A stretch of 64,000 bases of DNA. Source: Octopus sinensis. Lineage: Eukaryota. Every line of letters starts with the position of its first letter. Within the stretch, counting starts at the first letter, position 1. The notes under the pieces were generated by a model that was given only the letters and a program-made list of their open reading frames with translations, did no database searches and was not told where the DNA came from. The stretch covers positions 135,160,001 to 135,224,000 of the forward strand of contig NC_042999.1 in the NCBI RefSeq assembly GCF_006345805.1. The letters run 5' to 3'. This document shows, one piece after another, positions 528 to 62,701 of this stretch. The position numbers were made by a program, and so were the translations under genes.

Positions 528-532
528 TATAT

Positions 533-955
533 CATCATCATCATCATCATCGTTTAGCGTCCGTTTTCCATGCTAGCATGGGTTGGACGGTTCTACTGGG
601 GTCTGTGAAGCCAGAAGGCTTCATCAGGCCCAGTCAAATCTGCCAGTGTTTCTACGGCTGGATGCCCTTCCTAACGCCAACCACTCCATGAGTGTAGTGG
701 GTGCTTTTTACGTGCCACCCAACAGGTGCCAGACAGAGCTGGCAAACGGCCACGAACGGATGGTGCTTTTTATGTGCCACTGGCACGAGGGCCAGGCGAG
801 GCTGGCAACAGACACGAACGGATGGTGCTTTTTACGTGCCACCAGCACGAGGCCAGTCGGGGCAGCGCTGGCAACGGTCGGGAAACGGAAGGTTCTCTTA
901 CATGCCACCGGCACTGGTAACACATCTGCAATTTCCATTGATCGATTTCGATTCT
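533..955 (-). mobile_element. RTE-clade LINE 3' UTR (5'-truncated) with 3 pseudoknot modules and (TGA)n tail
   Basis: Near-identical to 51944-52350; same sequence is contiguous with RTE RT C-terminus at 54667-55620; (CAT)n on + strand is the tail. Confidence 0.8.
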
Positions 956-23319: not shown

Positions 23320-23353
<34 letters not shown>

Positions 23354-32300: not shown

Positions 32301-35300
32301 TGGGTGTCTTCCACTATAGCCCCGAGCTGACCGGAGCTTTGTGATTGAATTCGGTAGGTGGAAGTTACTGCCGTGTGTGTATGTGTGCGTATAGCTGCTC
32401 AGTGCTTTCCGAAAGAGAGAGAGAGGGGGAAGCTCCCTCATAAGCATAAATTGGTTGGTTATGCAATTTGGCAGTTTAGATATGTTTTTCTTTTTTGTGT
32501 TTATTCTTTGTTATCAAAGGCTCCAATGATGATTGATTGATTCTAGTTTCAGCTCACGAGCTGTGGCCATGCTGGGGCACCATCATTTGATTGCATCAAA
32601 TCAGAAGAATCTTGCTTTTAATTTTGCCAAAACTTAGTGAAATTAACATGTTTAATGTTCCTCTTGACTAGTTGTATGATGACAGCTGTTAGAAAAATAT
32701 GTGCAAGGACAGAAATCCTGAGGGCTAATATTTTGGGAAAGAAGTACCAGAAGTGTTGGTCAATGTGAGGCATGGGGTTCATGAAGACAATATGGGTGAC
32801 AACTTAGTGTGAAAGAAGTAAGTTGAGAGTGCTTGAGTAGAAGTGACACAAGAGCAACTAGTTCCAATTGACAGAAGTTACTGTAGTAGTGGTTGAAAAG
32901 ACAAAGAGGGGAGAGGGTACATCTTTGGGTCAGGGTGGAATATACAAGAATTTTAACTTGCAGGGCTGTATTAAATGGGAACCTATATCAGAGTTTGGGC
33001 ATAATGAAGTAATATTATAGTTGTTTTGTATATAAATTATGCTAGGCGTCGAGCTGGCAGAAACATTAGCACGTCGGACGAAATGCTTAGCGGTACTTCG
33101 TTTGTCTTTATGTCCTGAGTTCAAATTCCACCAAGGTTGACTTTGCCTTTCATCCTTTCAGGGTCAGTAAATTAAGTACCAGTTGTATACTGGGGTTGAA
33201 CTAATCGACTGCCCCCCCCTCCCCAAAAGTTTCAGGCCTTGTGCCTAGGGTAGAAAAAAAGTATATAAATTATGCTGTTTGTTTGGAACCAATTGAAGAA
33301 TTAGAAGATTTAAAGTCAGATATTTGGGGGTGGAGTTGTCACAAGAGGTTTTTCATTTTTACAAGTTTTATTTAACTTTGTAGCTGATCTTTGAATGGGT
33401 AAAAACTTTTTTATGATTTTCAGAGCTTGTAATTTATGTTAGTGGTAAAGAGCAGTTAATATCCACAAAGTTGGCTTAATCTGTGATATATTATATTGTT
33501 GATAGGTATCATCATTATCATCATTTAATATCCATTGTCCATGCTGGCATGGGTTGGATGGTTTGACCGGGCTGACATGCTAGAAGGCTGCACCAGACTC
33601 CAGTCTGATTTGGCAGTTTCCATTTATTACCCAAATGTTGTGTTTGTAAGTACTCACAGTGCTGCATGTTGAAAATGGTCCATCAGATTTTTGTTTTATT
33701 GGATAAGATGTGAAGTATCAGATAAGGTGATCTGGTACTCCTGAGGAGTATTTCAGGACATATGTAAGAAGGTTAAAAGTAATTTGAACTCTTTGAAAGT
33801 ACAAATAAGTGTCCACTAAACTCTCTGTCTTAATTCCTCATCAATCAATGTAGATCGTGATGTCTTCACAAGGAAGTTCAGGTCTAAATACTGATAGGAA
33901 CTTGCATTTATGAATGTTACTTTGATAGTTTATATCTAAAACATTGTTGTGTATTTTATGTATTTACATGGAATTTTCTACTGATTTTCTTCGTATTGCA
34001 GCGGGAACTTGAGAAAGTAAAGAAACGACGTCTTGAACGAGAAAAGGAACAAGAAGAGAGGGAGAAAGAAAGGGTATGTATATATAGCTTGTTTCTTTCT
34101 TTTACATATTAACAGGGCACAGTGGTTGATTAGTTGAGTACTGAGATAGTTGTTAAAAGTTTTAAAGCTACTGATTTTTCTTGTGAGTGAAGTTCATTTC
34201 TGATATATTCATATATATATTACAGAGATATACTTGCATAGCAAGTGACCTGATCTGAGATCGTGTGCTGAAACAAAATCAATTTACTGTATACCTCTCC
34301 TGTCTTCTCTCGGGGTGCTTACACTCTGTCGTGTATGCTACCACCCCTTCTTCCAGTCCTTCCATGCCTGTTTCTTTTTCCTAATGGCCCTGTTAACTAC
34401 ATTGTTCCACCACCATGTTACCTTGGGTTGAGAGGGGACTTTGCACCATCCACAGATCTGGTAAGTGGCCCTCAACAGGTTGACTTGGTGTTTGCTAGGT
34501 TGACTATAAGACCTTTCGATTCTAGACCTCATGGTTTGTCTGCCTTCCTACTTACTAAGACTTTGGTTTTTGCAAGATTGACTCTAAGGCTCTTTGAATT
34601 TAGACCTTGCTTCCACACCTGAAACTTCTCTAGTTCTAATAGTGACTCAGCTATTAGAGCAAGGTCAGTGTAGAGGAGCTCCCAGGGGCATCCTGCCTTG
34701 AATTCCTCTGTTATTGCTTGGAGGACTATGATGAATAAGAGGAGGCTGAGAACTGATCCTTGGTGGACCCTTGCCCCTACCCAAAATTCTTCACTGTGCT
34801 TGTTGCCAACCCTCACCTTACTGACAGCATCCCTGTACAACTCTCACTAACCATTCATCTATCCCTAGTTTCCTCATTGACCACCAGATAAGGGATTGTG
34901 GGACACTGTCAAAGGCTTTCTCCATGTCAACAAAAGCCAAGTACAGTGGTTTATCTTTGGTTGGGTATTTCTCCTGCAGCTGTCTTACTTGAAATATAGC
35001 ATCAGTGGTGCTTTTCCCTGGCACAAACCCAAACGGCATCTCATGTAGATGACTTTCTCCCTAATTAGTTGGGCTATGACCCTCTCCGTGACTTTTATTA
35101 CCTGATCCAATAACTCGACACCTCTGTAATTATTTGTATCTAATGCATCACCTTTACCTTTGTAGCAGTTGACTATAGTGCTGCTACACCAGTCATTGGA
35201 TATGACTCCTTCATGTATAACCTGGTTGACTATGTGGGTGACTAGACTATAGCAGACATTGCCAGATATCTCTGCGGTGATTCCTGATGGGCCAGGGGCT

Positions 35301-36926
35301 TTACACTTGTCTTCATGCCCTTAATTGCTTTATCTATCAAGGTACTGACAATTCGGATAGCTGGGCTGTCTGTTGGGTCAACATTTGACAGACTCTCTTT
35401 CTCCCAATCATTCTCTTTATTTAGCAGCCTTTCATAGTGGCATCTCCAAGTCTCTCTCCTTGCAGCCTTGTTAAATGCAAGTGAGCTGTCATCCATGTGG
35501 ACACATTTCTCTCGTATGACATCACAATTTTCTCTCATGCACTGTCTTGCAACACGAAGCACCTCAAGTCTTTGGTCCTCATGACACAGAACATTGGCAA
35601 ATTTTTTCTTATCTGCTTCCCCTCTGGCTAAATTAACCCTGTCTCCTACCTTCTCCTCTGGCAGTCTTATACAATTCTCTGCTACCACCATTCTTCCAGT
35701 CGTTCCATGCCTGTTTCTTTTCCCTAATGGCCCTGTTAACTACATTGTTCCACCACCATGTTACCTTAGGTTGAGAGGGAACTTTGCACCATCCACAGAT
35801 CTGGTAAGTGGCCCTCAACAGGTTGACTCTAAGACTCTTCGATTCTAGACCTTACATCCACACCTGAAACTTCTCCTCTAGGTCTGATAGTAACTCAGCA
35901 ATTAGAGCAAAGTCATCAGCATAGAGAAGCTTCCAGGGGTATCCTGTCTTGAATTCCTCCTTATATTAATGTCAGAGATCAACATTATATATACATTCTC
36001 AGGGTTAAATATTTGCTGTTATGTGTGGGGAGTAAATGATTGTATAACATATGTGTATATTTGTGTGTGTGTGTATGTGTGCACTCATGGATATATGTAT
36101 GCTCTCTTCTATTTTTAATTATTTGAAATCTTTTATAAAGAAGGGGCTGGGTTTTACAAAGATAAAATGCTCCATCATTGGAATTTAGATAACAAAAACA
36201 TAATGTGTGTGTGTATGTACGTGTGTATCTATGTTAGTTTTGTAATGTGTGTATCAGAAATAGTGAAGAGTGGAGTAAAGAGAGGTACAGTGTTTGAAGT
36301 AATGTTTCAAAGAATTGTATAGGTTTGAAATGATTTCTTAATATTTATTTTTTTCTGATAAAATATTCTTTCTATTTCTGGTTTCATAAAAGGAACGTCT
36401 GCAACGAGAGAAAGAAGCTGAATATTTCCGTGAGTGGGAAAAACAAGAAGACAGTGTAAGTTGCCATCTTGCCAAACTGGCTGTCATTTCTAGATATTAC
36501 AAACATCTCCATTTTACAGTGCATTACAACAAGAAACCTCTGTGATGTCACAACGGCTAGTGTGCAAAATGGGGAATTAAAACAACGAATTGAAATAATA
36601 AGTTTCAACAATTCAAAACAATTTGCACTGAAATGAAGAATTAGCAAATGCTAAATAGATTACTGTTAATAAGCTGTCTGTTTATACTCATGAAACATTT
36701 TTCGTCAAATTGATGTCACGATGGCTAGTGTGAAAAATGCCGAAATTTTATGATTTTTGAAAAATCAATGGTGATTAAAAATTGATTTTTTAAAAAATTC
36801 CAAAGGCATAAGCCCCACATATGTGTGAAGTTTCATCAAGGTCTGTTGGATAGTCTTGGAGTAGTTAAAGTAGCAAATTCACAAACACACAAACTTGCCA
36901 TTTAATACATACATACGTACGTACGT

Positions 36927-37551: not shown

Positions 37552-37589
<38 letters not shown>

Positions 37590-40500
37590 CATCATCATCA
37601 TCATCATCATCATTTAACGTCCGCTTTCCATGCTAGCATGGGTTGGACGGTTCAACTGGGGTCTGGGGAGCCCGAAAGCTGCACCAGTCCAGTCAGATCT
37701 GGCAGTGTTTCTACAGCTGGATGCCCTTCCTAACGCCAACCACTCCGAGAGTGTAGTGGGTGATTTTATGTGCCACCGACACAGGTGCCAGACGAGGCTG
37801 ACAAACGGCCACGCTCGGATGGTGTTTTTATGTGCCACCGACACAGGTGCCAGACGAGGCTGGCAGACGGCCACGCTCGGATGGTGTTTTTATGTGCCAC
37901 CGACACAGGTGCCAGACGAGGCTGGCAGACGGCCACGCTCGGATGGTGTTTTTTATGTGCCACCGACACAGGTGCCAGACGAGGCTGGCAGACGGCCACG
38001 CTCGGATGGTGTTTTTATGTGCCACCGACACAGGTGCCAGATGAGGCTGGCAAACGGCCACGATCGGATGGTGCTTGTTACGTGCCCACAGCACGGAGGC
38101 CAGTCGATGCGGTACTGGCTACGGCCACGTTCGGATGGTTTTCTTATGTGCCACGTGCCACCGGCACTGGTACCACAAAGATACAAATTCCATTGATGTT
38201 CATCTATTTTGATTTGTTTTGATTTGATTTGATTTTCACTTGCCTCAACAGGTCTTCACAAGTGTCACAAGAAGGAAGGTATGCACAGGTGGACTGACTA
38301 CGTCCCAGGTAGGGGCCATGGGTTATGGCCTGACTAGTCTTGCCGGTCTTCGGATGGTGTTTTTATGTGCCACCGACACAGGTGCTAGATGAGGCTGGCG
38401 AACGGCCACGATCGGATGGTGTTTGTCATGTGCCCACCGCACTGACTACGGCACTGATGGATTTCTTGTGTGCCACAGGCACTGGTACCACAAGATACAA
38501 ATTCCATTGATGTTCATCTATTTTGTCTATTTTGATTTGATTTGATTTGATTTTCACTTGCCTCAACCGGTCTTCACAAGTGTCACAAGAAGGAAGGAAG
38601 GTATGCACAGGTGGACTGACTAGTCTTGCCGGTCTTCGGAAGGTGTTTTTATGTGCCACCGACACAGGTGCCAGATGAGGCTGGCGAACGGCCATGATCG
38701 GATGGTGTTTGTTACGTGCCCACAGCACGGAGGCCGGTCGATGCGGAACTGGCTACGGCCACGTTCGGATGGTTCTCATGTGTGCCACCGGCACTGGTAC
38801 CACAAAGTGTGTGCCACCGGCACTGGTACCACAAAGATACAGATTCCATTGATGTTCATCTATTTTGATTTGTTTTGATTTGATTTTATATATATATATA
38901 TTGTCAATAACAATAAGGGTAAAATTAATTAATTAATTAGTAATTAATAATTTTACATGTGTGTATAGGTGTGTATGTGTGTATTTCTCAAATTGCTGAA
39001 CCAAGTCATGAAAGTTACAGAAAGAGTTATAGCCCAATTAATTAGAAAGAATTATTGTAGATGAGATGCAGTTTGATTTTGTGCTAAGTAAAAGTATTAC
39101 TCATACTCCCTTTCTAGTAAGACAACTCCAGGAGAAATATTTAACTAATTGCAAGCCATTGAAGTTGGCATTCAGCAAACTGGAGAAAGCCTTGTTCTTT
39201 TATGTAGTGGTCTCTGAGGAAGCTAGAGATAGTCAAATGGCTTGTGAGAACTATGCAGGCCATGTACAGGGACACTGCCTGTAAGGTGTGTGTTAGCAAT
39301 GAGTACAGTAACAAATTTAGTCTACAAGGTAAGAGTACACCAGGCGTGGTTCACAGGGAGGACCAGAGGTACTATTTAGCATAATTCCCTCTTACAAGCA
39401 TTTGGAACAATGACTTGCACTAAAGGACTCCTTGGGACAATGAGATAATGTTAAATCAAACAGTATGTTAAGGTAGCATGACTGGTCCATTTGTTTCAGT
39501 TCTGGAGTAACCTCTCTTCTTAGTGCTGAAATTTAAAGAGAATCTGAATGCTAATATATTCATCATCATCATCACTTAGCATCTCTTCTTTCCATATTGG
39601 TCCAGGCTGAATGGTTTGACATGAACAGATTAGCTAGAGGGCTGCACCAAGTTCTAATGTCTGCTTTGAAATAGTTTCTACAGCTGGATTCCCTTCCCAA
39701 TGCCAACCACTTCACAGAGTACTGGGTGCTTTTTGCATAGCACCAGCAAGAACTGGTGAGGTCATCAAGTACTTGCAAGCCATGACCCCCTTATCTGAGT
39801 GAGGTATAAGAATGTAAGATTGAAGGATAGGAGCAGATGTCTTACTGAAGTGGTAAGTACATAGTTTTTGCCCACCTGAAAAGAGAGAGACAGAGAGAGA
39901 GAGAGATGTGAGGTCAAGGTAAATATGAAAGACAGAATAGGATAGAGGAACAGTAAGGAGGATGTGTTGGTATATGTGCTAGAGCATATTATTATGACAA
40001 AAACTAACATCCCAATGTAGTGTTTAAAGACACCAATTGTATTTCATCTCTTCCTTCACATCATACAGCTAAACCTATTGACCTGTTGGCAAAATACATC
40101 AGCGCAGAAGATGATGATCTTGCTATTGAGATGCACGAACCTTACACATATCTCTATGTAAGTACAAAATATTCGATTTATTTTTTTTTAAACCCAATTA
40201 TACCTAAATTATCAACAGACAGGAAAGAAATTGTTAGCAAAACTAAGAGTTTTTAAGTGAAAAAAGTTACATTAGTCAGTTATTATAATTGCATGCATGC
40301 AATAATGTTGTTTAAACTTCAAAAATATTTAGAGTTCATCCAATTTTCCAATTTTTTTTTTCCTAACCTGAAATTTTAAGTATCAAGAATTATTAATAAT
40401 AGGTGTTATTTGGTTAATTGATTATATTGAAATTCTTTCAAACTGTTCATGGTGCTTTTTATGTGCCACCTGCACAGGAGCCAGTCTAGCGGCACTGGCA

Positions 40501-43500
40501 ATGACCTTGCTCGAATGTTTTTACACGAGGCGATGCTGGTAACAATCACGCTCGAATGGTGCTTTTTATGTGCCACCGACACGGAAGCCAGTTAGCTGCT
40601 CTGGCAACGATCATGCTCGGATGGTGCTCTTAGCACTCCACTAGCACGGATGCCAGTCATTGAATTTGATTTCGATTTCAATTGCCTCAACAGGTCTTCG
40701 CAAGCAGAGTTTAGTGTCCAATGAAGGAAAGGTACGCATAAGTGGGCTGGTTACACCCTTGGCATAGGCCACGAGGTTATGGTCTCACTTGGCTTGCCGG
40801 GTCTTCTCAAGCACAGCATATTTCCAAAGGTTTTGATATTTGTTCCAACTGTCTGTGTTCTGAGTTGAAATCCTACTGAGGTCAACTTTACCTTTCATCC
40901 TTTCAAGGTTGATAAAAAGTATCAACTTAGACCAGTGAATTAGAGGAACAGACAAAATGGCTCTTAGTATCTGTTCTGATGCTTTGTGTTCTAACAGTAA
41001 TACCTGCAGTGACACTGGTACCAAGCTGTATCAAATATCAGACTAAGTTGGCAACCTTTCCCTTGGCTAAACACTGGTATTATAGAAAAGGGAGACTTGT
41101 GGGTATAGGAGACTGCAAGTCTTCTTCAAAAAATCTTGTCCCGGAATGTTTAGGATGTCTTATTATGTCATTTTCCTTTGACTAAATAGTCATCTCCCAG
41201 CAATACCTTGATATGTTGAAGAAGTTTCGGGCAAAGGTCAAGTGGCTTCATCTTGAACAAGAACTGAACTATTCTTTATGCAGTATGGTGTACTGCCACA
41301 GTGGGTAGTCACAGTGCATAATTGATTGAATGAAAAGTATCCAGAAAGATGGATGGGTGGTTGTGGATCTGCAACTTGATCCTCAGACTTTTTACCATGT
41401 GATCTCTTTCTATGAGGATTCATCAAATCAAAGGTATACTGCAGTCACCCTAAGGACATGCTTGAATTATTGCGAAAATGTGTTATGGCTGCCTTTATTG
41501 AGATGCATTGGAACATTATGCTTGAATATCAAAAAGTAGAAGTTACAGAATTTGGAGTTGCCCACATCGAAGTTCACATCTACAATTTAATTCAAGATAG
41601 TTGAAATGTTTTGTCAATGACTTGCATTGTACATTTTTAAACATAATGTGTCACATTGAATATTAAGATATGATTTATTTATATCAGATGTGTGTGTGTG
41701 AGAGAGAGAGAGAGCGAGTTTCTGCACTGTTTCTCTCTCCTGCGTTCCACTCATGTTCAGTCAACTCAAGGCTGTGGTAGAAAACACTAAGGTGCCACAT
41801 GGTAGGATTGAACCTGGAAACACTTGAGAAGCAAAGCAAAACCTCTTAACTACTTTGTCATACCTGCACACATATATGGAATAATTAAAGCAATTCTGTT
41901 TAATATTCTTCTGTTTCAGGGTCTTACAGTACCAGACCTGGAAGACTTACTTGAAGACATTAAAGTGTATCTACAACTGGAACAAGGTAAAAATGCAGAT
42001 TACTGGCGGGACATTATCACAGTTACAGAGGATGAGGTGAATAAACTGAAAAAGTTAGATCCTCTTAGTCGAGGTGAGACATGTGCTGTTTTGACTTTTC
42101 ACATTCAAATTGGTTTAATCTAGCTATAATTATGATATTCTTGGTTTTGTCAACATGTTTGCTTTAATAATAATATAACCCCACCAAATTACACAAATAG
42201 TTGAAGTTTCCTGTGGTTGTTTATATCATTGTATATATATATTTCTTTACCGCCCACAAAGGGCTAAACATAGAGGGGACAAACAAGGACAGACAAAGGG
42301 ATTAAGTCGATTACATCGACCCCAGTGCGTAACTGGTACTTTATTCCGAAAGGATGAAAGGCAAAGTTGACCTCGGCGGAATTTGAACTCAGAACGTAAC
42401 TGCGGATGAAATACGGCTACGCATTTCGGCCATATATACATCAACATATCTAACAGCATCAGTATTATAATGACTAAAGTGTTATACTTTAATCAAGATA
42501 CACTACTCTATAAATAAATTCACATATCAAACATTATTGGTATTATAAGTAAATTGTTAAACCTTAGACAAGACACCACTGTGAGAGAATACATTGACAT
42601 ATTTAATACTGCTAGTAATCATCATCATCATCATTTTCAAGTCTGCTTTTTCTATGCTGGCATGGGTTGGATGAGTCAGTTCAACACATGTCATAGTACA
42701 TTGTCATCTCTTTTGTGAGGTTCAGCAACACAAGATGGTCCCTCACCACTTGTGCTCACATCTTTTATAATTTTTATCTTCTGCAAATTCCTTCTGCTTG
42801 CATCACTAGGTACATAATTACCCAGCTGTCATTTTTCATATCCATCATGTTTCTTTTTTAATGAAGTTTCTCACTTGCATACTACAGCGAATACATCTAG
42901 CGTGTAGTTTTTCTCTCAGCGTATTTGTGCTGTATTGTTCATGCATGCTGACATTACTCATTCTGTGAAACATTCTAACCTCATTTCATTTTAGCTTTTG
43001 CATATCCTCCACAATCATTGCCAATGTCTCACAGGCATGCAATATTACACTTTGTATACAAACATCATGCAACCATCCCATCCCTCATAAAGAGAAACTC
43101 TCTGTTACCAATAGAGATAACAACCTCTCCATATACCCTTTTTCCTTTCTCTGGCTACTGTACTTTAACACTATTCACCTCCACTGCTGATTTGGTTACC
43201 TAGGTTACCAAAGATATCAATTATTTCTCACATATCTTCTGGGCAATTGAGAAAGTTCATTCTTGGGTGCTTTTATTTACTAGCTGTTCCTGTGTATCCA
43301 TCACATATGAAATCCTTCTTGTCTGTCAACCTAACTGAGATCCAACTGCTTCTTTTGTGTACCAATTGTTTGCAGTAGGTACAAAGTGTAGAGTTTTCTT
43401 TCTACATACTGAACATGGTCAATTCCTTGGTGGTGTGATATTCTGCTTTCTTCACTGCTCACAAAAATTTTCACCTTTCCCAGTTCAGTTTTAGGCCTTG

Positions 43501-49500: not shown

Positions 49501-52500
49501 CTATCTTTCAGCTATACACCGCCTGCACCAACATCAACACCTTCACTGACACTCCAACAACAACAACAAATGTAATACTCACATGTACAACATTAATCAC
49601 AGTAGTTGTGTAAGAGGTAGTTTCTGAGTGTACAGCCATGTCTCGTGATTCTAAGACTAGATTTGCTGCTGTTTTTCAACTGACAGATTTAAAAAATAAT
49701 ATTTACCAAAGAAGTAACTTTACATTAAGGAGTGCAGCTTGATAAAATAAGTAGCAGTCAAGAACATGAGTAGCCTCTCCACCTCAAATTTCAGGCCTTG
49801 TACCTATAGTGGAACAGGTTATATGTCTGTTACTCTGTTCATCTTGAATAAATAATTACATTCAAGCTGTTCATCAAACAACTATGATTTGATCCAGTCC
49901 CTGCCATACATAACACACTGTCCCAAAATGTTTTTGGTATGAGAAACACACATCTTCAGGACTACTTATAAACCTTCATTGTATATGACTTGATAAACAA
50001 TTTTTTTGTGACTCTTTATGCCTATGACTAACAAGATAAGCTGGCTAGTATTTTATCTTCATTGTGTATTTTATTACAGCAAGGAATTGAGTCTGCTCCA
50101 CTGTTTCCTATCATGGTTGAAAGTGAGGGTCCACAGAGAGTTCCTGCAAACAATAATGTACCACAGCCAAGTTCAAGTTCAGCTGATGGTGGAAGTGAAT
50201 CTGTAACAACACAGAATAAAGTCGACTCCAGTGTAACAGCACCAGCAAACACTTCTGAGGGAGAAGAAATGCAAGATGGAGCCACGTAAGTCAGGTTTTT
50301 TTTAAATAACTCAAAATTATTTATGACATTGAGATTTGTTGCAAGCAATGTCGCTCAGACTTGAGTTCTTTTTGTTATGGCTGTAATGTGGTTACTACTG
50401 ATTATGTTATACAGTGTGTTGTTCTATATTCTTTGTGATATGGATTTAACTCAGTTAATACTGAATATGTTATGTGGATTGTCATATATCTTTTGTGACA
50501 TGGTTGTAACATACAAAGTTTGTATAAAAAAAAGAACAATTAACTGTTTTTTTAAAAAGCCAAATTTTCACTTTACAATTTAATGAAACTTATCTCCTTC
50601 AGTATAGTTCCCTCTCCTGTTGGTAACACTGCTTTCAACATTTTCTTATTGTTTTGGAACATGACCTGATGCATTTTCAAGTGTGCTATTCATGTAGTGA
50701 AGTTTTTTGATTTCCTCTGTTATCTAAAATCAGTGATCTTTCAGACTGGGTGTCAACTTTGGGAATGCAAACACATAAGCAAGGGCCAAATCTAAAGAGC
50801 AGGGCACCATGTTTTGGCAAAACATCCTGGATAACAAGTGATATGTGAGCAGATGCATTATGTTGCCTGATCCTAGTTTTGTTTATCCATTCTCTTGCGT
50901 TGTCTCTCTCAAATACCTCTAGACATCCAAGTAAAATTGTCTATTGATTTTCTGGTCAAATGGAAGAAACTTGTGATAAAAGACAGCCTTCCATTCAAAG
51001 AAGATGTTCCAGCAACTCTGACATACCTGTTTTGGACACGGCAACAGTGATCCATCTAATTGCATTGAATGCCATTTTGTTTTCATTAAACTAGCAGAGA
51101 TTTATATTTATCATCTGTTATTATAGTTTCAAAAAAGTGTTATTAGTATTCAAACAATCAAACAACTGACTGATTGTTATTCTGTTCTGTTTTGTTTGTC
51201 TCTCAGCAGATTTAGCACAAATATTTTGGTAGCATGATGCATTTTAATTATTTTCTTTTAAAATCACATAGCAAGGACTTTTACAAATGCTTATTTCTTG
51301 AGAAATTCATTGGCAATACAGTGACGGGTTTTACAGATCACAGCACATACTTGTATATAATTGTTGTCCATTGTCTTTGAAGATAATCCTGAGTTGGAAT
51401 CATTTTTGATGTGTCTTCTTCCTGATTATAAATACTCCTGTTACACACGAGATTGTGTGTAACTAAAGCAGTTCTCTCCATAAGCCTCTTGCATCATTAG
51501 AAAATTCCATACTGCAGCCTTCGGGCTTCCCAGACCCCAGTTGAACTGTCCAACTCATGCTAGCATGGAAAGCAGACGTTAAACGATGATGATGATGATG
51601 ATGATCCTTCATTGTTTATGTTATGGCAAACCACCAAGTGTACTAAACATATATTCATTCCTGCGCATGTAGATTGATGACTAATTGATATAATGTGATA
51701 TGGTTATTATTAAACTGCAGGCCAATGTCATCCATGTGCAGCACTATTATCACAAGCTCACCATGCCAGCTGATTGGTGCACTGACTTAAAAGATTGTTT
51801 CTTTTTGAACAGACTTCATATTTGTAACTATGGTAACACTGAGTATGTTATGGTATTAATGAATATTGTATAATATTCTGATATATGTAATATTTACATT
51901 TTGTATAATATTCTAATTCCCCACAGCACTGAAACCAATCATTCATCATCATCATCATCATCATCATCATTTAGCGTCCGTTTTCCATGCTAGCATGGGT
52001 TGGACGGTTCTACTGGGGTCTGTGAAGCCAGAAGGCTTCATCAGGCCCAGTCAAATCTGGCAGTGTTTCTACGGCTGGATGCCCTTCCTAACGCCAACCA
52101 CTCCGTGAGTGTAGTGGGTGCTTTTTACGTGCCACCCGCACTGGTGCCAGACAGAGCTGGCAAACGGCCACGAACGGATGGTGCTTTTTATGTGCCACCG
52201 GCACGAGGGCCAGGCGAGGCTGGCAACGGACACGAAACGGGGCGGTGCTGGCAACGGTCGCGAAACGGAAAGTTCTCTTACATGCCACCGGCACTGGTAA
52301 CACATCTGCAATTTCCATTGATCGATTTCCATTGATCGATTTCGATTCTGATCTGATACTAATATTTATTGCAATATATATTTCATCAAAATTTTAAAGC
52401 CTGTTTATGAAGGTAAGAATTAATGTAAGAATTAATTCAATTAATATATTTGTTTAGTTCTGAACCTGTTTTCACTGAACAAGACTTAGTCAATCAGTGC

Positions 52501-54194: not shown

Positions 54195-57100
54195 CATGCC
54201 TCCTTATTGATATGACTGTCCCAATCGATATAAACGTATCTGTCAAGACCTACCAGAAACTGAGCAAATATAAAGATCTGGAAATAGAAATCAGAAAAAT
54301 GTGGAACCTGAAGACTAAGACAATACCTGTTGTCATAGGTGCCCTGGGAATGATAGCAAAAGGGGCTGATTGCTACCTAACTCAGGTACCAGGAAACCCC
54401 AAAATGGCAGAAATTCAAAAGATAGTGCTCATGGGAACTGCTCATATCCTACACAAAATACTTTCTATGTAATCTCAAGTTTAAAAACAAACATAATTTT
54501 CGTATGGTTTTTTAGGCATTCACTAGTACAACACTATGTACAAAACCAAATATATGGCACCCTAGGCATAACACCAACATGAACATCCAACTTGCTGTCT
54601 CTTGAGGTCTCTGGGTGAGACTTGGAGCAACTTGTACAAATGTAAAGCAAAAGTCAAACATAGAATCATCATCATCATCATCATCATCATTTAGCGTCCA
54701 TTTTCCATGCTAGCATGGGTTGGATGGTTCAACTGGGGTCTGTGAAGCCGGAAGGCTTCATCAGGCCCAGTAAGATCTGGCAGTGTTTCTACGGCTGGAT
54801 GCCCTTCATAATACCAACCACTCCATGAGTGTAGTGGGTGCTTTTTACGTGCCACCTGCACAAGTGCCAGACAGAGCTGGCAAACGGCCACGAATGGATG
54901 GTGCTATTACGTGCCACCGGCACGGGGGCCAGGCGAGGCTGGCAGCGGACACAAACGGATGGTGCTTTTATGTGCCACCGGCACAGAGGCCAGACGGGGC
55001 GGCGCCGACAACGGTCATGATCGGATGGTTCGCTTATACACAGCTGCAATTTCCACTGATGTTGATCGACTTCAATTTTGGTTCTGCTTTCTGATATCTG
55101 ATTTGATTTTGATTTTGATCACTGGTCTTGCCGGGTCTTCTCACACACAGCATACTTCCATAGGTCTCTAGTCATTTCCTTGGTGAGACCTAAAGTTCGA
55201 AGGTCGTGCTTCACCACCTCATCCCAGGTTTTCCTGGGTCTACCTCTTTCACAGGTTCCCTCAACTGCTAGGGTGTGGCACTTTTGCACACAACTATCTT
55301 CACCCATTCTCGTCACATGCCCATACCAGTGCAGACGTCTCTCTTGCACACCACAACTGAGGCTTCTTAGGTTCAACTTTTCTCTCAAGGTACTTACACT
55401 CTGTCGATTATGAACACTGATTTACACATCCATTGGAGCATACTGGCTTCATTTCTTGCGAGCTTACGCATATCCTCAGCAGTCACAGCCCATGTTTCAC
55501 TACCATGTAGCATGGCTGTACGTACACATGCATCATACAGTCTGCCTTTTACTCTGAGCGAGAGGCCTTTTGTCACCAGCAGGGGTAAGAGCTCTCTAAA
55601 CTTTGCCCAGGCTATTCTTAATAATAATAATAAGAATAATAATAATCCTTTCTATTAAAGGCACAAGGTACTTAATTTATTGACCCTCAAAGTCAACCTC
55701 AGTGGAATTTGAACTGAAAGGTAGTGACGGGTGAAATACTGCTAAGCATTTTATTCAGCATGCTAACAATTCTGCTTCCCTTTCTGTTCTAGCTGTAATG
55801 ATCTCTGCTCCTTATAGTTAGTAAATTTTGAACCAACACTGCTTTGGGCCTACTTTGATAAATAGACATTAAACGTCTCTGTCTTATACATGATTTGTTG
55901 ATCATGTCACAGTTACTTATATATGATTTCTCTGTTGTAGACAACAAAGTGAAGACCTTTTGAATGAATGGCCAGTATCTTGTATCCAAATTAGCATTGT
56001 TTCCATAGCAAAGATATTTCATCCTGTCCACCTGGGTTATAAATGACCAATCCACTTGTACAAAGAATATTTTGTTAGCTTCTTCTGCAGCTTGAAATCT
56101 TCCCATTTACAGGAATACAACTGCAGTAAACCAGCCTTCTTACTTCTTATCAAACTCTTATCTGAGAAGATACACTGAACATTGAATAGTTAAATTTCTG
56201 CCACTGCCATCTTAAGCACTATAAACTGATAGAAAATATAAGAAAAATCCTTAATCTACACGTTACAGCTCATATTGACTACATCAGATCCAATCTCACC
56301 TCTCATAATTATCTCCATTATTTGTTGCTGACTCTTGAGAATCAGGACTATCTTTTACCTTTCACCCTTTATTTGTTTCAGTCATTAGATTACGAGCATG
56401 CTGGGGCACTGCCTTGAAGAATGGACTTCAGTACTTTTTTTTTATAAGCTTGGTACATACTTTATCAGTCTGTTTTGCTGAACTGCTAGATTACGGGGAC
56501 ATAAATATACCAACACCAGTTGTCAAGCAGTGGCAGGGAACAAACACAGACACAAGAACACACACACATATACGACAAGCTTTTGTGAGTTTCCATCTAC
56601 CAAATCCGCTCACAAGGCTTTGGTCAGCCTGGTGCTTTAGTAGAAGACTCTTACCCAAGATAATAATAATGAAATTATTGTATACAGTGCTCAGGTGCAC
56701 CACAACTTGTCAGACAGTGCATATAAAGCACATGCAGTAATGTACAAATGTCTGGAAAGCGAACAATGCATGAGTCAGATACATGCTTGTGTGTGTTTGG
56801 AGGGGAGAAAATCAGGTGTAGTGTTGGCGAATCTCAGAAAGCATGGAAGTTTTGAAGGATGCAGTGCTCCGACAACTAACAACTGATGCCGGCAGTTTGT
56901 TCCATGCTTCAGCAACTCTCAGCATGAAAAAATGTTTCCTAAAGTCATGGGAGCTGTGCTGTTTTCTGACTTTGTAAATATGTCCATGGGTGTTAGATGG
57001 GTGGAGTTTGAAAAGGTGCTCAGAGTTATTGTTTGTGCGATGGTTGATAATTTTATGGGTGTCTGCCAAGTCAGCTGCCAGACATCGGAGTTTCAATGTG

Positions 57101-59862: not shown

Positions 59863-60399
59863 GTAAGTATCTCCCCTTCTCTGAAGGCTTGGAAATTAAC
59901 CTTTCATCTCATTTTCATTATTTTCTATTCATTCTGCAACTTTTTTTTTTTTTTTTTTCTTTGCATCAGTATGAATTCATTGATTGATTCAGAATATTTA
60001 AACACTCAAATGTGTGCTAACCCTGTTAGTATTTATTCACCTGAAATAGCCTCTGGCTCTATGAAACAGAACATCTCAATGAAATGTATTCCCACTTAAA
60101 TTAACATCTTCCATCATAATTTTATCTAAAAAATTTTTGTTAAGTAATGTTCCAAACACTGGCTTAACAATGGGATAGTTAATTATTCTCATATTCTCTT
60201 CATACTAATTGAAAAACATGCATAGTATATTTCATTAAAATTATGATCATGAAAGCATTAACAAACATATTTCAGCATTCAGATATTTTAATTAACTCAG
60301 ATGAAAAAGAGCTGTTAATAGTAGATATAGGTATATCTACTATGGATCAGGTTTAATAGTACTAAGAACTTACTGGAAATAACCCATAACCCATGGCAT

Positions 60400-60900
60400 C
60401 TACCTGGGATGTAGCCAGTCCACTTATGCATACCTTTCCTTCTTGGGACACAAAACTCTACTTGTGAAGACCTGTTGAGGCAAGTGGAAATCAAAATCGA
60501 AATCGATCAACATCAATGGAAATTGTAGCTTTGATACCTGTGCCAGTGACACGTAAGCGAACCATCCGAACGTGGCTGTTGCCAGCGCCGCCCCAACGGG
60601 CCTCCATGCTGGTGGCACGTAAAAAGCACCATCCGATCGTGGCCGTTGCCAGCCCTGCCTGGCCCCTGTGCCGGTGGCACGTAAAAAGCACCATCCGTTC
60701 GTGGTCGTTTGCCAGCCTCGTCTGGCACATAAAAAGCACCCACTACACTCACGGAGTGGTTGGCGTTAGGAAGGGCATTCAGCCATAGAAACATTGCCAC
60801 ATCAGACTGGGCCTGGTGCAACCTTCTGGCTTCCCAGACCCCAGTTGAACCGTCCAACCCATGCTAGCATGGAAAGCAGACACTAAATGATGATGATGAT
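60400..60900 (+). mobile_element. RTE 3' UTR copy, sense orientation
   Basis: Modules TGTGCCGGTGGCACGTAAAAAGCACC; ends CATGCTAGCATGGAAAG...(TGA)n. Confidence 0.85.
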
Positions 60901-61885
60901 CTCTGGAGGAAATAGACTGTTGCACAGAATGCTTAAATTAGGAATTATTCATAAGCAAATATTCTTAAGAATTTAAGTTAGTAGATTCCTGAAGGAGTCT
61001 ATGAGTTTATGAGATGAGGGTCTTGAAAGAATAGTAATGAAAAACAAAACAACTTCCAGTGAGACTTTGGATGTAACAAATAAACTCACATTCTATATTC
61101 TATCGAAAAATTTGGTTAGTGTATAATTATTATGAATAATGACTTCTAACATAAATACAAGACCAGAAGTTTGGGAGTAGGGGTTAGCTGATTAAATCAA
61201 CCCTAGTATTTGAGTTGGTTGGTTAATTCAAATTACTTCATAAGGAGCATAGGGCCAGTTTCCCAGTTTCTCTAGCATATATATATTCTTCCCTGGACAG
61301 GACACCAGCCCATCGCAAGGTTATTCATTTTTACCTGTTAAGTGAACTGGAGCGTCATGAAATGAAGTATTTTGTTCAAGAACACAACACATCATCAGGT
61401 TGAGGGATCGAAACCATGATCTTATGCTCACGAGTTCAACACTCTAACCACTGGGCCCAGTATTTGACTGGTACTTTATTTTATCAACCTCAGAAGAATG
61501 AAAGGCAATGTTGGCCTGAGTAGGACTCAAACTTAAAATGAAAAAAGAAAACCATAAATAGCACAGGGCATGAAAATTATAGTTAGTTAAATAAACTCAA
61601 ATACTTAACTGTACTTATTTTATTAATTCCAGAAAGATAAAAGACAAAGTTGTGTCAAGCAGAATTAGAAACTGATATTGATTTGTTACACAACACCACA
61701 AATATTACAGAGGAGGAATCTAATTCATTGAATCAACCCCAGTATTTGTTTATTATTTATTTATTTATTTAACTCTGCTAGGGTTAAAAGTAAATTCAAC
61801 TTTGGTGATGTTTGAACTCAAAACACAAAACTAAATATTTGCAATATTTACTCTAGCTCACTACTCTTTTTGCTATTCCACTACC

Positions 61886-61927
<42 letters not shown>

Positions 61928-62701
61928 ATCCTTTCTACTAAAAGCACAAGGCCTGAAATTTGTGGGGAAGGGACTGGTTGATTACATTGACCCCAGTGTT
62001 TCACTGGTACTTAATTTATCGATCCCAAAAGGACAAAAGCAAAGTCAACCTTGGCAGAATTTGAACTCAGAATGTAGCAATGGGCAAAATACTGCTAAGC
62101 ATTTCATCCAGCATGCTAACGATTCTGCCAGCTTGCTACCTTAATGATAATAATAATAATCCTTTCTACTATAGGCACAAGGCCTGAAATTTTAGGGTAG
62201 GGGCAAGTCAATTGCAACAACTCCAGTACTCAATTGGTACTTAATTTATCAACTCTGAAAAGATGGAAAACAAAGTTGACCTTGGCGGAATTTAAACTTA
62301 GACCATAGCAGCAGACAAAGTACTGCTAAGCATTCCACCCAGCGTGCTAACAATTTTGCCATCTTGCCATCTTAATAATAATAATAATAATAATAACGAT
62401 ACTAACTGTTTTTAATTTAAGCAAAGATAAGCAATTTGAGGTAATAATTAAGGGATAATTCTTTCTACTGTAGGCATAAGGCCTGAAATTTTGAGGGTGG
62501 GGGAAGCTAGTAATTATATTGACCCAGTGCTTAACTGGTACTTATTTCATCGACTGTGAAAGGATGAAAGGCAACGTTGACCTCAGCAGAATTTGAACTC
62601 TGAACAAAAGGATGAGTAAAATGCCACTAAGCATTTCATCTGGCATGCTAACAGTTTTGCCAGCTTGCCACCTCAATAGTAATTATATTAATAATAATAA
62701 T

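What the first reader, a model, noticed from the sequence alone, without database searches (positions are those of the whole stretch)
37759..38190. RTE 3' UTR is a variable-number array of H-type pseudoknot modules
Seen: seven ~62-bp units here, versus about three in the copies at 533, 52000, 54667 and 60400. In LINE-sense RNA each unit contains S1a (C/U)GUGC - 1-nt loop - S2a GGUG - S1b GCAC(G/A) - A-rich loop UAAAAA(G) - S2b CACC, preceded by a hairpin UGCCAG-CCUCGU-CUGGCA. Support across units: the outer S1 pair swaps C-G (54900-24) to U-A (54961-85); the C-to-U change in this array keeps a U-G wobble; the 1-nt loop varies freely (C, U, A, G). Known: a 1-nt L1 with an A-rich minor-groove loop is the classic compact pseudoknot fold. 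Inference: a structured-RNA VNTR inside a LINE 3' UTR may serve as a nuclease block, translation modulator or RT-binding platform, with copy number as a tunable trait.
Basis: partly seen in the sequence, partly recalled or inferred. Interest (0 to 1): 0.8.

Follow-up and report, generated by a model that had tools for sequence, protein, structure and literature searches.

The report
Amplified RNA module in octopus LINE
A 62-base unit repeated about seven times at the tail end of an octopus jumping gene (an RTE-type LINE) is a locally expanded copy of an old, conserved RNA hairpin module; the hairpin is supported by evolution, the proposed pseudoknot is possible but unproven, and the extra copies look like ordinary repeat slippage.

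Summary
Window 37759-38190 (sense = minus strand) carries six full 62-nt units plus a half unit. Other copies of the element carry 2-3. Related octopus loci carry 4, 5 and about 11.

The array does lie behind a LINE ORF (endonuclease + reverse transcriptase). ORF end, a post-stop segment, (AAATC)n, the array, a 145-nt unique region and a (GAT)n tail are collinear in at least six copies.

Within octopus, 55 distinct units give no significant covariation, and folding energies are no better than shuffled sequence.

The decisive evidence came from outside octopus. The same module (S1a-N-GGUG-S1b-A-rich-CACC) sits next to a conserved domain in the 5' UTRs of related LINEs and in SINE-like mini-elements from other organisms. 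There S1 has different but complementary letters (GAGA/UCUC, AUGA/UCAU, GUGC/GCAC), so the S1 hairpin is supported.

Helix S2, which would make it a pseudoknot, is never broken across lineages. It shows only G-C to G-U changes, and one unit type of a young subfamily has lost it.

Three of the seven units are essentially identical, which points to recent local duplication rather than a tuned trait.

Verdict: real, moderately interesting, interpretation partly supported.

The parts
37588..37613 (-). (GAT)n microsatellite tail, the 3' end of the element
   Evidence: TRF. The same tail is present in all copies and in related LINEs.
37614..37660 (-). Terminal conserved 3' segment. It reads as the relic ORF end ...[12 protein letters not shown] and contains the perfect palindrome CCATGCTAGCATGG (37628-37641). 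It is the candidate RT-recognition hairpin.
   Evidence: Six copies in the window against 0 expected. The same ~45 nt forms the coding end or short 3' UTR of LINE contigs L007, L009, L010, L019 and L020.
37661..37758 (-). Rest of the 145-nt unique region. It contains the conserved domain GGTTGGCGTTAGGAAGGGCATCC (37719-37741) followed by a remnant resembling a LINE C-terminal coding stretch (..ARSDW..).
   Evidence: The domain was found in 39 places. These include the 5' UTRs of L009, L019, L020 and L021 and SINE-like elements.
37759..38069 (-). Five near-identical 62/63-nt units of type C': C'1 37759-37820, C'2 37821-37882, C'3 37883-37944, C'4 37945-38007, C'5 38008-38069. Example, C'3: H1 arms 37922-37927 and 37910-37915; S1a 37903-37907; L1 37902; S2a 37898-37901; S1b 37893-37897; L3 37887-37892; S2b 37883-37886.
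   Evidence: C'2 = C'3 (100%). C'4 differs by one extra A. C'1 and C'5 each differ by 3 substitutions from C'2/C'3.
38070..38136 (-). Unit A' (67 nt, about 74% identical to the C' units). H1 has an 11-nt loop, S1 is intact (CGUGC/GCACG), and S2a is changed to GUGG.
   Evidence: The same unit type occurs in L016 995-1061 and window 38704-38770.
38137..38190 (-). Half unit a' plus the start of the head sequence.
38191..38237 (-). Head (TAGATGAACATCAATGGAAT) and the (AAATC)n-like microsatellite that separates the post-stop segment from the array
38238..38345 (-). Post-stop segment and the last ~12 nt of the LINE ORF (GAAGACCGGCAAG...). Junction CACCATCCGAAG|ACCGGCAAG with the upstream block.
   Evidence: Homologous to L016 770-885, which follows an open ORF end.
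38346..38900 (-). Two further head-to-tail blocks (38346-38632 and 38633-38900). Each holds [ORF-end/post-stop, (AAATC)n, head, a', A' or its remnant, one C' unit]. This is a higher-order tandem duplication of about 290 bp.
   Evidence: blocks 91-96% identical in ungapped columns.
54665..55618 (-). Reference copy that shows the context: C-terminal ~160 aa of the EN+RT LINE ORF (55127-55618, one frameshift, ending ...[13 protein letters not shown]), then (AAATC)n, 3 units (54838-55026), the unique region and the tail
531..945 (-). Copy with 3 units plus the half unit, 5'-truncated in the (AAATC)n region
51945..52345 (-). Copy with 2 units plus the half unit (unit A partly deleted)
60375..60903 (+). 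Copy with 3 units (the third has a 15-nt deletion), 5'-truncated in the post-stop segment
40449..40870 (-). Older, diverged copy (subfamily D): ORF end ..LEKTRQAK*, post-stop segment, then units; 3'-truncated
   Evidence: Sister copy at L017 10151-10535.

Best explanation
The array is a tandem amplification of an old cis-acting RNA module that belongs to this RTE-like LINE lineage.

In related LINEs from other organisms, one copy of the module lies in the 5' UTR. It sits 20-45 nt upstream of the domain GGUUGGCGUYAGGAAGGGCAUCC and about 100 nt before the start codon. It is kept in their SINE-like deletion derivatives.

In octopus, a mini-element of that kind is fused behind the LINE ORF and serves as its ~550-nt 3' UTR. 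It consists of a 5'-UTR-like part, a short C-terminal remnant and the LINE tail. The whole is copied as one unit from the terminal hairpin and (GAT)n tail.

A 62-nt stretch containing the module has been duplicated to 3 units in the common subfamily. It keeps changing in number by replication slippage, unequal exchange or RT template switching. The 7-unit state here includes a very recent local gain of about two units.

Each unit forms, in sense RNA, a 4-5 bp hairpin S1 that presents GGUG in its loop. This step is shown by compensatory changes. In octopus there is also a 5-6 bp hairpin H1, inferred from invariant arms around a hypervariable loop.

GGUG may pair with the CACC that follows an A-rich stretch to close a compact H-type pseudoknot. 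That pairing is compatible with the data but not shown.

The most likely role of the module is as a binding or folding element for the retrotransposon ribonucleoprotein, or for RNA stability. This role is inferred only. Extra copies are most likely tolerated by-products.
For: The array is real and variable in number: (2-3 units typical; 4 at L014 18006-18252; 5 at L013 10170-10463; about 10.5 at L015 9950-10645 in a two-unit higher-order repeat).

LINE context:
- tblastn and Pfam show an EN+RT ORF end directly upstream in c54667.
- The same collinearity occurs in L016, L017, L013 10058-10826, L015 16991-17556 and window 40449-40870.
- All 9 post-stop segments found are followed by the array.
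- 5' ends are scattered, as in 5'-truncated LINE copies.
- Petrosino et al. 2022 (PMC9115989) describe the octopus element RTE-2_OV with a ~600-nt 3' UTR that is mostly repeat, starting at the ORF end.

Composite origin:
- Relatives end ...[12 protein letters not shown], whereas the octopus ORF stops at EKTRQD(Q)*. The relic ...[12 protein letters not shown] reappears after the array.
- The domain and module sit in the 5' UTRs of L009/L020, L019 and L189 and in the mini-elements L003 and L020 3450-3790.

S1:
- On the cross-lineage alignment A3, 91.9% of cells are paired against 83.0 +/- 2.0 in shuffles (0/500).
- 15 cells show a change on both sides, against 5.3 expected (0/500).
- 4 of 5 S1 pairs show compensatory changes, and the slid controls are far lower.
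- Wobble pairs make sense only in the sense strand.

Block conservation within octopus (pairwise diversity):
- Low: H1 arms 0.06-0.09, S2b 0.045, S2a 0.12, L3 0.145.
- High: 5' linker 0.32, H1 loop 0.40, L1 0.62.

S1 or S2 alone is only marginally stable in the non-octopus modules (S1 -0.6 to -2.8, S2 +1.0 to -3.5 kcal/mol). That fits a need for a second interaction.

Recent local gain: C'2 = C'3 = C'4 (98-100% identical), while the unique region is 94.5% identical to the sister copy L016, which has A' + 3 C' units.
Against: - S2 has no compensatory change. It is invariant or shows G-C to G-U only.
- In the A' unit of the C' subfamily, S2a is GUGG or GAGG in three copies from at least two independent insertions.
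- Within octopus, the proposed structure pairs no better than column shuffles (90.0 against 89.8%, 130/500).
- RNAalifold finds only a weak alternative pairing, GCCA/UGGC (-4.1 kcal/mol, covariation term 0).
- Single-unit minimum-free-energy folds differ between unit types and are not unusually stable (z from -1.3 to +0.25).
- The nested 6-bp version of S1 (-8.0 kcal/mol) is about as good as the pseudoknot in a simple model (-6.9), and shuffles do as well.
- The cross-lineage set is small: five non-octopus sequences with two S1 variants.
- Three single-copy octopus 'X-type' modules break part of S1.
- No full-length octopus element was seen, so the octopus 5' UTR is unknown.
- The function was not tested at all.
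Confidence: 0.6

Rival explanations
1. Every unit folds into hairpin H1 plus a compact H-type pseudoknot (S1 + S2, 1-nt L1, A-rich L3 in the minor groove). The units act as functional modules (nuclease block, translation modulator or RT platform), and their number is selected.
For: - The topology is conserved across distant lineages with different S1 letters, while GGUG, the 1-nt L1, the A-rich L3 and CACC stay.
- S2 is 100% paired in the cross-lineage set, and its 4 changed cells are all G-U.
- S1 alone is marginal in stability, so a second helix would help.
- L3 and S2b are strongly conserved within octopus.
Against: - S2 shows no change on both sides anywhere.
- S2 is lost in the A' unit of a young subfamily.
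- The pseudoknot energy is within the range of shuffled sequence and close to the nested alternative.
- GGUG can equally pair with the upstream CACC or with GCCA-related segments.
- From general knowledge of pseudoknot geometry (not computed to a conclusion here), a 1-nt L1 usually spans an S2 of 5-7 bp. Four bp is tight.
- Copy-number gains look local and recent and hit different unit types at different loci.
- In relatives the module is in the 5' UTR, not at the RT entry site.
Confidence: 0.2
2. Neutral minisatellite. The 62-bp unit is junk that happens to contain short inverted repeats. The repeats promote slippage at the DNA level, and no RNA structure matters.
For: - No significant covariation among 55 octopus units.
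- Folding is no better than shuffles.
- Copy number drifts from 2 to about 11.
- Higher-order duplications lie at the same locus.
- Tandem repeats inside transposable elements commonly seed satellites; for example a limpet satellite has been traced to a Nin-SINE (PMC11121367, listed).
Against: - The module is conserved, with compensatory S1 changes, in LINE 5' UTRs and mini-elements of other organisms.
- Conservation within units is strongly block-wise and is not explained by CpG sites alone.
- The old subfamily D keeps the module nearly unchanged while its 5' linker has diverged.
Confidence: 0.12
3. DNA-level element. The module plus the GGTTGGCGTYAGGAAGGGCATCC domain is a LINE internal promoter (as proposed for 'LP-SINEs'). 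Its presence in the octopus 3' UTR is a relic, and conservation reflects transcription-factor binding.
For: - It sits just upstream of the start codon in L009/L020, L019, L021 and L189.
- It lies at the 5' side of the mini-elements L003 and L020 3450-3790.
- Matetovici et al. 2016 (PMC4758252) propose LINE-5'-derived promoters for short retroposons.
Against: - Compensatory changes in S1 and strand-specific G-U pairs indicate selection on a folded single strand, not on a duplex binding site.
- In octopus the units lie downstream of the ORF, where a promoter for the LINE makes no sense, yet their blocks stay conserved across subfamilies.
Confidence: 0.1
4. The array belongs to a separate SINE that inserts next to or into LINE tails, rather than to the LINE's own 3' UTR.
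For: - Two copies (531-945 and 51945-52345) start at almost the same point in the (AAATC)n region.
- The part from head to tail has the build of the SINE-like mini-elements seen in L003 and L020.
- In L020 such a mini-element lies directly behind a complete LINE.
Against: - All 9 post-stop segments continue into the array with the same order of parts, in several subfamilies.
- No LINE copy ending at (AAATC)n was seen.
- 5' ends of the other copies are scattered from 93 bp before the tail to inside the ORF.
- No tRNA-like head was found.
Confidence: 0.08
5. The module, or unit plus domain, is a self-cleaving ribozyme of the kind found at the 5' ends of some non-LTR retrotransposons (HDV-like, twister, hammerhead).
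For: - It lies in the 5' UTR in related LINEs.
- It has pseudoknot-like topology.
- HDV-like and twister ribozymes are known in non-LTR elements (PMC3185411, PMC8501958, listed).
Against: - No Rfam family reaches even E = 1-10 in the array or in five related loci.
- The module is only about 30 nt.
- No conserved catalytic-core features were recognised.
Confidence: 0.03

Closest known systems
RTE-2_OV / RTE-2_OB, the RTE-clade LINEs reported as expressed in the octopus brain (Petrosino et al. 2022, PMC9115989)
   Same: Octopus host. A single ORF of about 1,100 aa with endonuclease and reverse transcriptase. [quoted passage not shown] This matches the ORF end, (AAATC)n, 62-nt array and tail seen here.
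   Different: The paper calls the UTR a 'microsatellite' and gives no sequence in the text. It does not describe 62-nt units, their fold or their variable number. Identity of the present family with RTE-2_OV was not tested because no sequence was available here.
Protein-binding structured RNAs of R2 non-LTR retrotransposons (3' UTR and 5' pseudoknotted RNA bound by the R2 protein; PMC12222951, PMC11601368, listed)
   Same: A folded, partly pseudoknotted RNA element in a LINE UTR acts in cis on the element's own ribonucleoprotein. Conservation is of structure more than of sequence.
   Different: R2 elements are site-specific, their RNAs are larger and single-copy, and protein binding has been shown by biochemistry and cryo-EM. 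Here nothing is shown beyond comparative sequence, the module is about 30 nt, and it is tandemly amplified.
Conserved central domains of SINE superfamilies (CORE, V, Deu/Nin-DC, Ceph, Meta) and LINE-5'-derived 'LP-SINEs' (PMC4758252, PMC4824008)
   Same: A short domain is shared by unrelated short retroposons and LINEs across phyla. Its function is unknown. For the Vhc subdomain a conserved stem-loop has been predicted. The module plus GGTTGGCGTYAGGAAGGGCATCC behaves the same way.
   Different: I could not establish which named domain, if any, this one is. No paper text holds the motif, and figures are not available. In octopus it lies in a LINE 3' UTR and part of it is amplified.
VNTRs inside retroelements and satellites derived from transposable elements (e.g. 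the SVA VNTR; the limpet PcH-Sat satellite derived from a Nin-SINE, PMC11121367)
   Same: Head-to-tail units of tens of bases inside a mobile element. Copy number differs between copies. Local higher-order duplications occur.
   Different: Here the amplified unit contains an RNA helix under demonstrable long-term constraint.
Compact H-type pseudoknots with an A-rich third loop (luteovirus frameshift pseudoknots, preQ1-I riboswitch aptamer). Comparison from general knowledge, not tested.
   Same: A 4-5 bp first stem, a very short L1, no L2, a 6-9 nt adenine-rich L3, and a 3-4 bp second stem.
   Different: No sequence or Rfam relationship. S2 is not supported by covariation. Different biological setting.

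Membership tests
RTE-clade LINE (the array being part of its 3' UTR) | Single long ORF with an apurinic-type endonuclease followed by reverse transcriptase, and no separate ORF1 | tested here: met
   The window holds only the C-terminal ~160 aa next to the array. Relatives that share this C-terminus and the tail (L007, L009, L010, L019-L021, L187-L189) have one ORF of 1012-1116 aa with Exo_endo_phos + RVT_1 (+PHD) on 3.3-4.4 kb contigs.
RTE-clade LINE (the array being part of its 3' UTR) | 3' end formed by a short tandem repeat instead of poly(A), with copies variably 5'-truncated | tested here: met
   (GAT)n tail in all copies. 5' ends range from 93 bp before the tail to inside the ORF.
RTE-clade LINE (the array being part of its 3' UTR) | Phylogenetic placement of the reverse transcriptase within the RTE clade | not tested
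   No reference set of LINE clades was available. The label rests on architecture and on the published description of octopus RTE-2_OV.
RTE-clade LINE (the array being part of its 3' UTR) | The array is contiguous with the ORF in independent insertions | tested here: met
   c54667, window 40449-40870, L016, L017 10151-10535, L013 10058-10826 and L015 16991-17556. 9 of 9 post-stop segments are followed by the array.
Minisatellite / VNTR | Head-to-tail units of about 10-100 bp whose number differs between copies or alleles | tested here: met
   Period 62. Between 2 and about 11 units among about 25 copies. Allelic variation at this locus is not testable here.
H-type RNA pseudoknot | First helix (S1) supported as a real pairing | tested here: met
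   4 of 5 pairs show compensatory changes across lineages. 0 of 500 shuffles reach the observed pairing or covariation, and slid controls are far lower.
H-type RNA pseudoknot | Second, crossing helix (S2: loop of S1 pairing with downstream sequence) supported as a real pairing | tested here: inconclusive
   Always pairable across lineages, but with only one-sided G-C to G-U changes. In decayed octopus units there are 17 breaking cells against 1 preserving cell. It is lost in the A' unit type.
H-type RNA pseudoknot | The pseudoknotted fold is more stable than nested alternatives and than chance | tested here: not met
   Simple Dirks-Pierce-style score of -6.9 (unit B) and -5.8 (unit C') kcal/mol, against -8.0 for the nested 6-bp hairpin. 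134/300 and 88/300 shuffles do as well. The model is crude and omits loop-helix triples.
H-type RNA pseudoknot | Direct structural evidence (chemical probing, mutate-and-rescue, NMR or crystal structure) | not testable with these tools
   Requires experiments.
Exonuclease-resistant RNA (xrRNA) or known self-cleaving ribozymes | Match to a curated covariance model | tested here: not met
   Rfam 15 gives no hit at gathering score in the window. Nothing relevant appears at E up to 10 in 37560-38260 or at E up to 1 in L009, L016 and L019-L021.
tRNA-derived SINE | tRNA-like head with a fixed 5' end | tested here: not met
   ARAGORN finds no tRNA-like sequence in the window. Upstream parts are LINE ORF and post-stop sequence.

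The most novel reading that the evidence does not exclude
The ~30-nt module (S1a-N-GGUG-S1b-A-rich-CACC) would be an ancient, pan-metazoan compact pseudoknot and the working part of a conserved 'core domain'. That domain is shared by RTE-like LINE 5' UTRs and the short retroposons they mobilise. It would be the docking site for the LINE-encoded protein. Octopus RTEs would have moved it to the 3' UTR and multiplied it, which could help explain their success in cephalopod genomes. This would give a structural and mechanistic answer to the long-open question of why SINE central domains are conserved.
Probability: 0.2. Interest if true: 0.75.

Novelty: new variant of a known kind. Interest (0 to 1): 0.5.

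Why it matters
Structured RNA elements in LINE untranslated regions decide which RNAs get copied into the genome. They are well understood for only a few elements (R2, eel UnaL2, human L1).

This work gives a small, testable RNA module with real comparative support for one helix. It is found in LINE 5' UTRs, in their short non-autonomous derivatives, and, amplified, in the 3' UTR of an abundant octopus LINE family that has been linked to brain expression.

It also shows how a LINE can acquire a new 3' UTR by fusing with its own deletion derivative, and how an internal module turns into a minisatellite and then into higher-order repeats.

If the module proves to be a protein-binding pseudoknot, it would bear on the old question of what SINE core domains do. 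If not, this is an ordinary VNTR built from a conserved hairpin.

Tried and rejected
- **tRNA-derived SINE.** Rejected: no tRNA-like head and ORF continuity.
- **Rfam, at gathering and permissive thresholds.** Nothing found.
- **Covariation among 55 octopus units.** No signal beyond column composition.
- **RNAalifold on the units.** Only a weak alternative pairing, with no covariation term.
- **Single-unit folding.** Not more stable than shuffles, and the folds are inconsistent between unit types.
- **My own H-type pseudoknot enumerator with shuffles.** The proposed pseudoknot is not exceptional.
- **Fetching more octopus copies through spurious ORFs.** Only 3 + 1 annotated Octopus vulgaris proteins came back, giving four 20-kb loci. 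This was useful but small.
- **Chimeric query to fetch full-length octopus RTE proteins.** Only one Octopus bimaculoides entry, without a contig. The other hits were 37-51% identical LINEs from other organisms.
- **Scans of genome contigs and viral contigs with GTYAGGAAGGGCATCC, and a protein-based scan of viral contigs.** Only chance bacterial hits. Two contigs had the domain but no module.
- **Covariance model of the module searched over all eukaryote-like loci held.** No instance beyond those already found.
- **Full-text search for the domain motif.** No relevant paper, so I could not name the domain.
- **Hand geometry check of whether 1 nt can span a 4-bp S2.** Abandoned because I could not verify the helix coordinates from memory. 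I report only that it is tight by comparison with known pseudoknots.


Full report
**Observation**

Tandem Repeats Finder reports a 62-bp period array at 37759-38154, with 6.3 copies and 90% matches. It reports shorter arrays of the same unit at 700-863, 52117-52236 and 54837-55000.

The element reads 5' to 3' on the minus strand and ends in (GAT)n at 37588-37613. In that sense the array is made of:
- a half unit a' (38137-38190);
- one diverged unit A' (38070-38136);
- five near-identical units C'5 to C'1 (38069 down to 37759).

The other window copies have 2-3 full units plus the half unit.
- C-G against U-A at the outer S1 pair in the two units near 54900-55026;
- a U-G wobble in this array;
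- a freely varying 1-nt loop.

**What the element is**

The window is AT-rich animal DNA carrying a TANGO6-like ORF and a galactosyltransferase ORF. Translated repeat ORFs and LINE fragments find only Octopus vulgaris and O. bimaculoides proteins. The source is therefore an octopus.

Copy c54667 continues upstream into the C-terminal ~160 aa of a LINE protein (tblastn; translation). It ends ...[41 protein letters not shown]. After that come an (AAATC)n-like repeat, a short head, three units, a 145-nt unique region and the tail.

The same order of parts, in some copies with a ~95-nt post-stop segment, is seen in:
- an ENA contig, L016;
- O. vulgaris loci L017, L013 and L015;
- the older window copy at 40449-40870.

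All nine post-stop segments found are followed by the array. The 5' ends of the other copies are scattered. No tRNA-like head exists.

Relatives that share the C-terminus and the tail are single-ORF endonuclease + reverse transcriptase elements of 1012-1116 aa.

It also agrees with the published description of octopus RTE-2_OV: a ~600-nt 3' UTR, mostly repeat, starting at the ORF end (PMC9115989). I did not test clade placement by phylogeny.

**Origin of this UTR**

The last ~45 nt of the element (AACCGUCCAACCCAUGCUAGCAUGGAAAGCGGACGUUAA) contain a perfect palindrome. In related LINEs from metagenome contigs, the same stretch is the coding end ...NRPTHASME(N/S)GR* or a very short 3' UTR. One other RTE-like copy in the window (42618-43395) also runs straight from ORF into this tail.

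Close relatives end ...[15 protein letters not shown]. The octopus ORF stops at EKTRQD(Q)*, and the relic ...RSDW...[12 protein letters not shown] reappears after the array.

The 145-nt unique region starts with GGTTGGCGTTAGGAAGGGCATCC. That domain, with a unit-like module 20-45 nt upstream of it, lies in three kinds of place:
- in the 5' UTR about 55 nt before the start codon of LINE contigs L009/L020, L019 and L189 (L021 carries the domain at the same position, but no module was found there);
- in ~300-bp SINE-like mini-elements (L003; L020 3450-3790) that end with the LINE tail;
- in other octopus repeat families.

The octopus 3' UTR therefore looks like a mini-element fused behind the ORF, made of a 5'-UTR-like part, a C-terminal remnant and the tail. 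In it, a 62-nt stretch containing the module has been duplicated in tandem. This last step is inference from collinearity.

**Structure tests within octopus**

I collected 68 units from the window and five loci, 62 of them distinct. I aligned 55 (A2).

Only the outer S1 pair shows changes on both sides: CG 16, UA 16, UG 15, not paired 8, of which 5 are C-A by the tally. S2 has none, with 17 pair-breaking cells against 1 G-U.

Both positions of the swapping pair are CpG sites. The association is weak (Fisher p = 0.08, uncorrected). The 16 U-A units come from about five lineages.

Other tests gave no support either:
- RNAalifold returns a weak, different pairing with no covariation term.
- Single units fold no better than shuffles, and differently for each unit type.
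- In a simple pseudoknot energy model the proposed fold scores -6.9 to -5.8 kcal/mol, a nested 6-bp hairpin scores -8.0, and a third to a half of shuffles contain a pseudoknot at least as good.

What does stand out is block conservation.

| Region | Pairwise diversity |
|---|---|
| H1 arms | 0.06-0.09 |
| S2b | 0.045 |
| S2a | 0.12 |
| L3 | 0.145 |
| 5' linker | 0.32 |
| H1 loop (6-11 nt long) | 0.40 |
| L1 | 0.62 |

The S1 core is also nearly invariant. One unit type, A', is found in three copies of the young C' subfamily, from at least two independent insertions. It has S2a changed to GUGG or GAGG.

**Structure tests across lineages**

The non-octopus modules keep GGUG, a 1-nt L1, an A-rich stretch and CACC/CACU. 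They carry different S1 letters.

| Source | S1a / S1b |
|---|---|
| L019, L189, L003, L020 mini-element | GAGA / UCUC |
| L020/L009 5' UTR | AUGA / UCAU |
| octopus | (C/U)GUG(C/U) / GCAC(G/A) |

The 15-sequence alignment A3 gave:
- 91.9% of cells pair, against 83.0 +/- 2.0 in shuffles (0/500).
- 15 cells have changes on both sides, against 5.3 expected (0/500).
- The covariation score is 0.335 against 0.19 (0/500).
- Sliding the partners destroys the signal.
- Four of five S1 pairs show compensatory changes.
- S2 is 100% pairable, with two invariant pairs and two pairs that vary only G-C to G-U.

The set is small. Three single-copy octopus modules of other families break part of S1. A covariance model found no further instances in the sequence I hold.

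S1 or S2 alone is only marginally stable in these modules. This fits, but does not prove, a second stabilising interaction.

I conclude that S1 is a real, old RNA helix presenting GGUG. H1 is a likely octopus-specific hairpin. The pseudoknot is an open possibility, at roughly one in three.

**Copy-number dynamics**

Among about 25 copies the array has 2-3 units as a rule. The exceptions are:
- 4 at L014 18006-18252 (unit B multiplied);
- 5 at L013 10170-10463;
- about 10.5 at L015 9950-10645, as a two-unit higher-order repeat;
- 6.5 here.

Here C'2 = C'3 (100% identical) and C'4 differs by one A. The unique region is 94.5% identical to the sister copy L016, which has A' + 3 C' units. About two units were therefore probably gained at this locus after insertion.

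Immediately upstream, 38346-38900 holds two more ~290-bp blocks. Each contains [ORF-end/post-stop, (AAATC)n, head, a', A', one C']. They are joined at CACCATCCGAAG|ACCGGCAAG and are 91-96% identical.

This is ordinary minisatellite behaviour: slippage, unequal exchange or template switching. Nothing points to selection on the number of units.

**Mechanism and rivals**

My best reading (confidence 0.6) is as follows. The module is an amplified cis-acting RNA element of the LINE lineage. It most likely serves as a folding or protein-binding element of the retrotransposon RNP, or for RNA stability. The extra copies are tolerated by-products.

| Rival | Confidence |
|---|---|
| Purely neutral minisatellite | 0.12 |
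| DNA-level promoter relic | 0.1 |
| Separate SINE | 0.08 |
| Ribozyme | 0.03 |

The RT entry site is more likely the terminal palindromic hairpin than the array. That hairpin is the part shared with all relatives, and the module sits at the other end of the RNA in those relatives.

**Comparison with what is known, and limits**

Tandem repeats in LINE UTRs, structured UTR elements bound by LINE proteins (R2), conserved SINE core domains and TE-derived satellites are all known. What I did not find described is:
- this module;
- its compensatory S1 changes;
- its dual location in 5' UTRs of relatives and, amplified, in the octopus 3' UTR.

I could not decide whether the adjacent domain equals a named SINE domain (Nin-DC/Deu or the 'LP' region). 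That remains a lead.

No full-length octopus element, no population data and no experiment were available.

Noticed in passing
window 37628-37641 (and 545-586, 51550-51591, 51962-52003, 54682-54723, 60854-60895); L007 3156-3217, L010 157-211, L020 3395-3440: The last ~45 nt of the element hold a perfect 14-nt palindrome, CCATGCTAGCATGG. This stretch is conserved almost letter for letter in RTE-like LINEs from unrelated metagenome samples. There it doubles as the coding end ...PTHASME(N/S)GR* or as a very short 3' UTR. It is probably the RT-recognition hairpin of the lineage.
   Followed up: partly
window 37719-37741; also 43921(+), 39708(-), 30553(-), 53579(-); L009 3320(-), L019 732, L020 192 and 3615, L021 997, L189 ~690: The domain GGTTGGCGTYAGGAAGGGCATCC is shared by the octopus RTE 3' UTR, several other octopus repeat families, the 5' UTRs of related LINEs just before their start codons, and SINE-like mini-elements. 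It may correspond to a named SINE core domain or to the 'LINE promoter' region of LP-SINEs. I could not verify which.
   Followed up: partly
window 38346-38900: Higher-order tandem duplication. There are two extra ~290-bp blocks, each holding the last bases of the ORF, the post-stop segment, (AAATC)n, the head and 2-3 units, joined at CACCATCCGAAG|ACCGGCAAG. It looks like a satellite in the making.
   Followed up: partly
L015 9950-10645: An array of about 10.5 units in an Octopus vulgaris copy, organised as five repeats of a two-unit (~133-bp) higher-order unit.
   Followed up: partly
L020 3395-3790: A complete LINE is followed within 15 bp by a ~300-bp deletion derivative of itself (5' UTR part + a few codons + tail). 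This is the same LINE-then-mini-element arrangement that seems to have become the octopus 3' UTR.
   Followed up: partly
L020 61-190; L187 ~500-590; L188 ~455-530: The 5' UTRs of these LINEs hold a second, different conserved module (..CCATCTAGGAG-loop-CTCY..GA..AAA..CC) about 64 nt upstream of the first. Its stem is GGAG/CUCU, AGAG/CUCU or GGAG/CUCC. The spacing resembles the octopus 62-nt period.
   Followed up: no
window 42618-43395 (-), 24218-25316 (-), 34344-36118 (-), 38987-39351 (+): Other RTE-like LINE fragments. The one at 42618-43395 runs from ORF straight into the THASxE tail with no array, so two kinds of 3' end coexist in this genome.
   Followed up: partly
window 17161-20760 (-) and 8055-8960 (+): An uninterrupted 1199-aa ORF with TANGO6/RTP1 domains and a 301-aa galactosyltransferase ORF. 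The TANGO6-like gene appears intronless here.
   Followed up: no
window 40870-40940 (-), 62536-62606, 21442-21511, 21624-21693, 7000-7056, 33111-33164, 42348-42395: Another abundant short repeat family (..GGATGAAAGGTAAAGTTGACCTCAGTAGGATTTCAACTCAGAAC..), unrelated to the array.
   Followed up: no
window 23124-23345 and 61925-62391: A perfect 100-bp tandem duplication (2.2 copies, 100% identical) in a TG/CG-rich stretch, and a 231-bp tandem repeat (2 copies, 78% identical).
   Followed up: no
window 37630-38196 (+): The expanded array creates a 188-aa antisense ORF starting at the ATG inside the terminal palindrome. Similar spurious ORFs are annotated as hypothetical proteins in Octopus vulgaris (P0001-P0003). 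These are annotation artefacts.
   Followed up: yes
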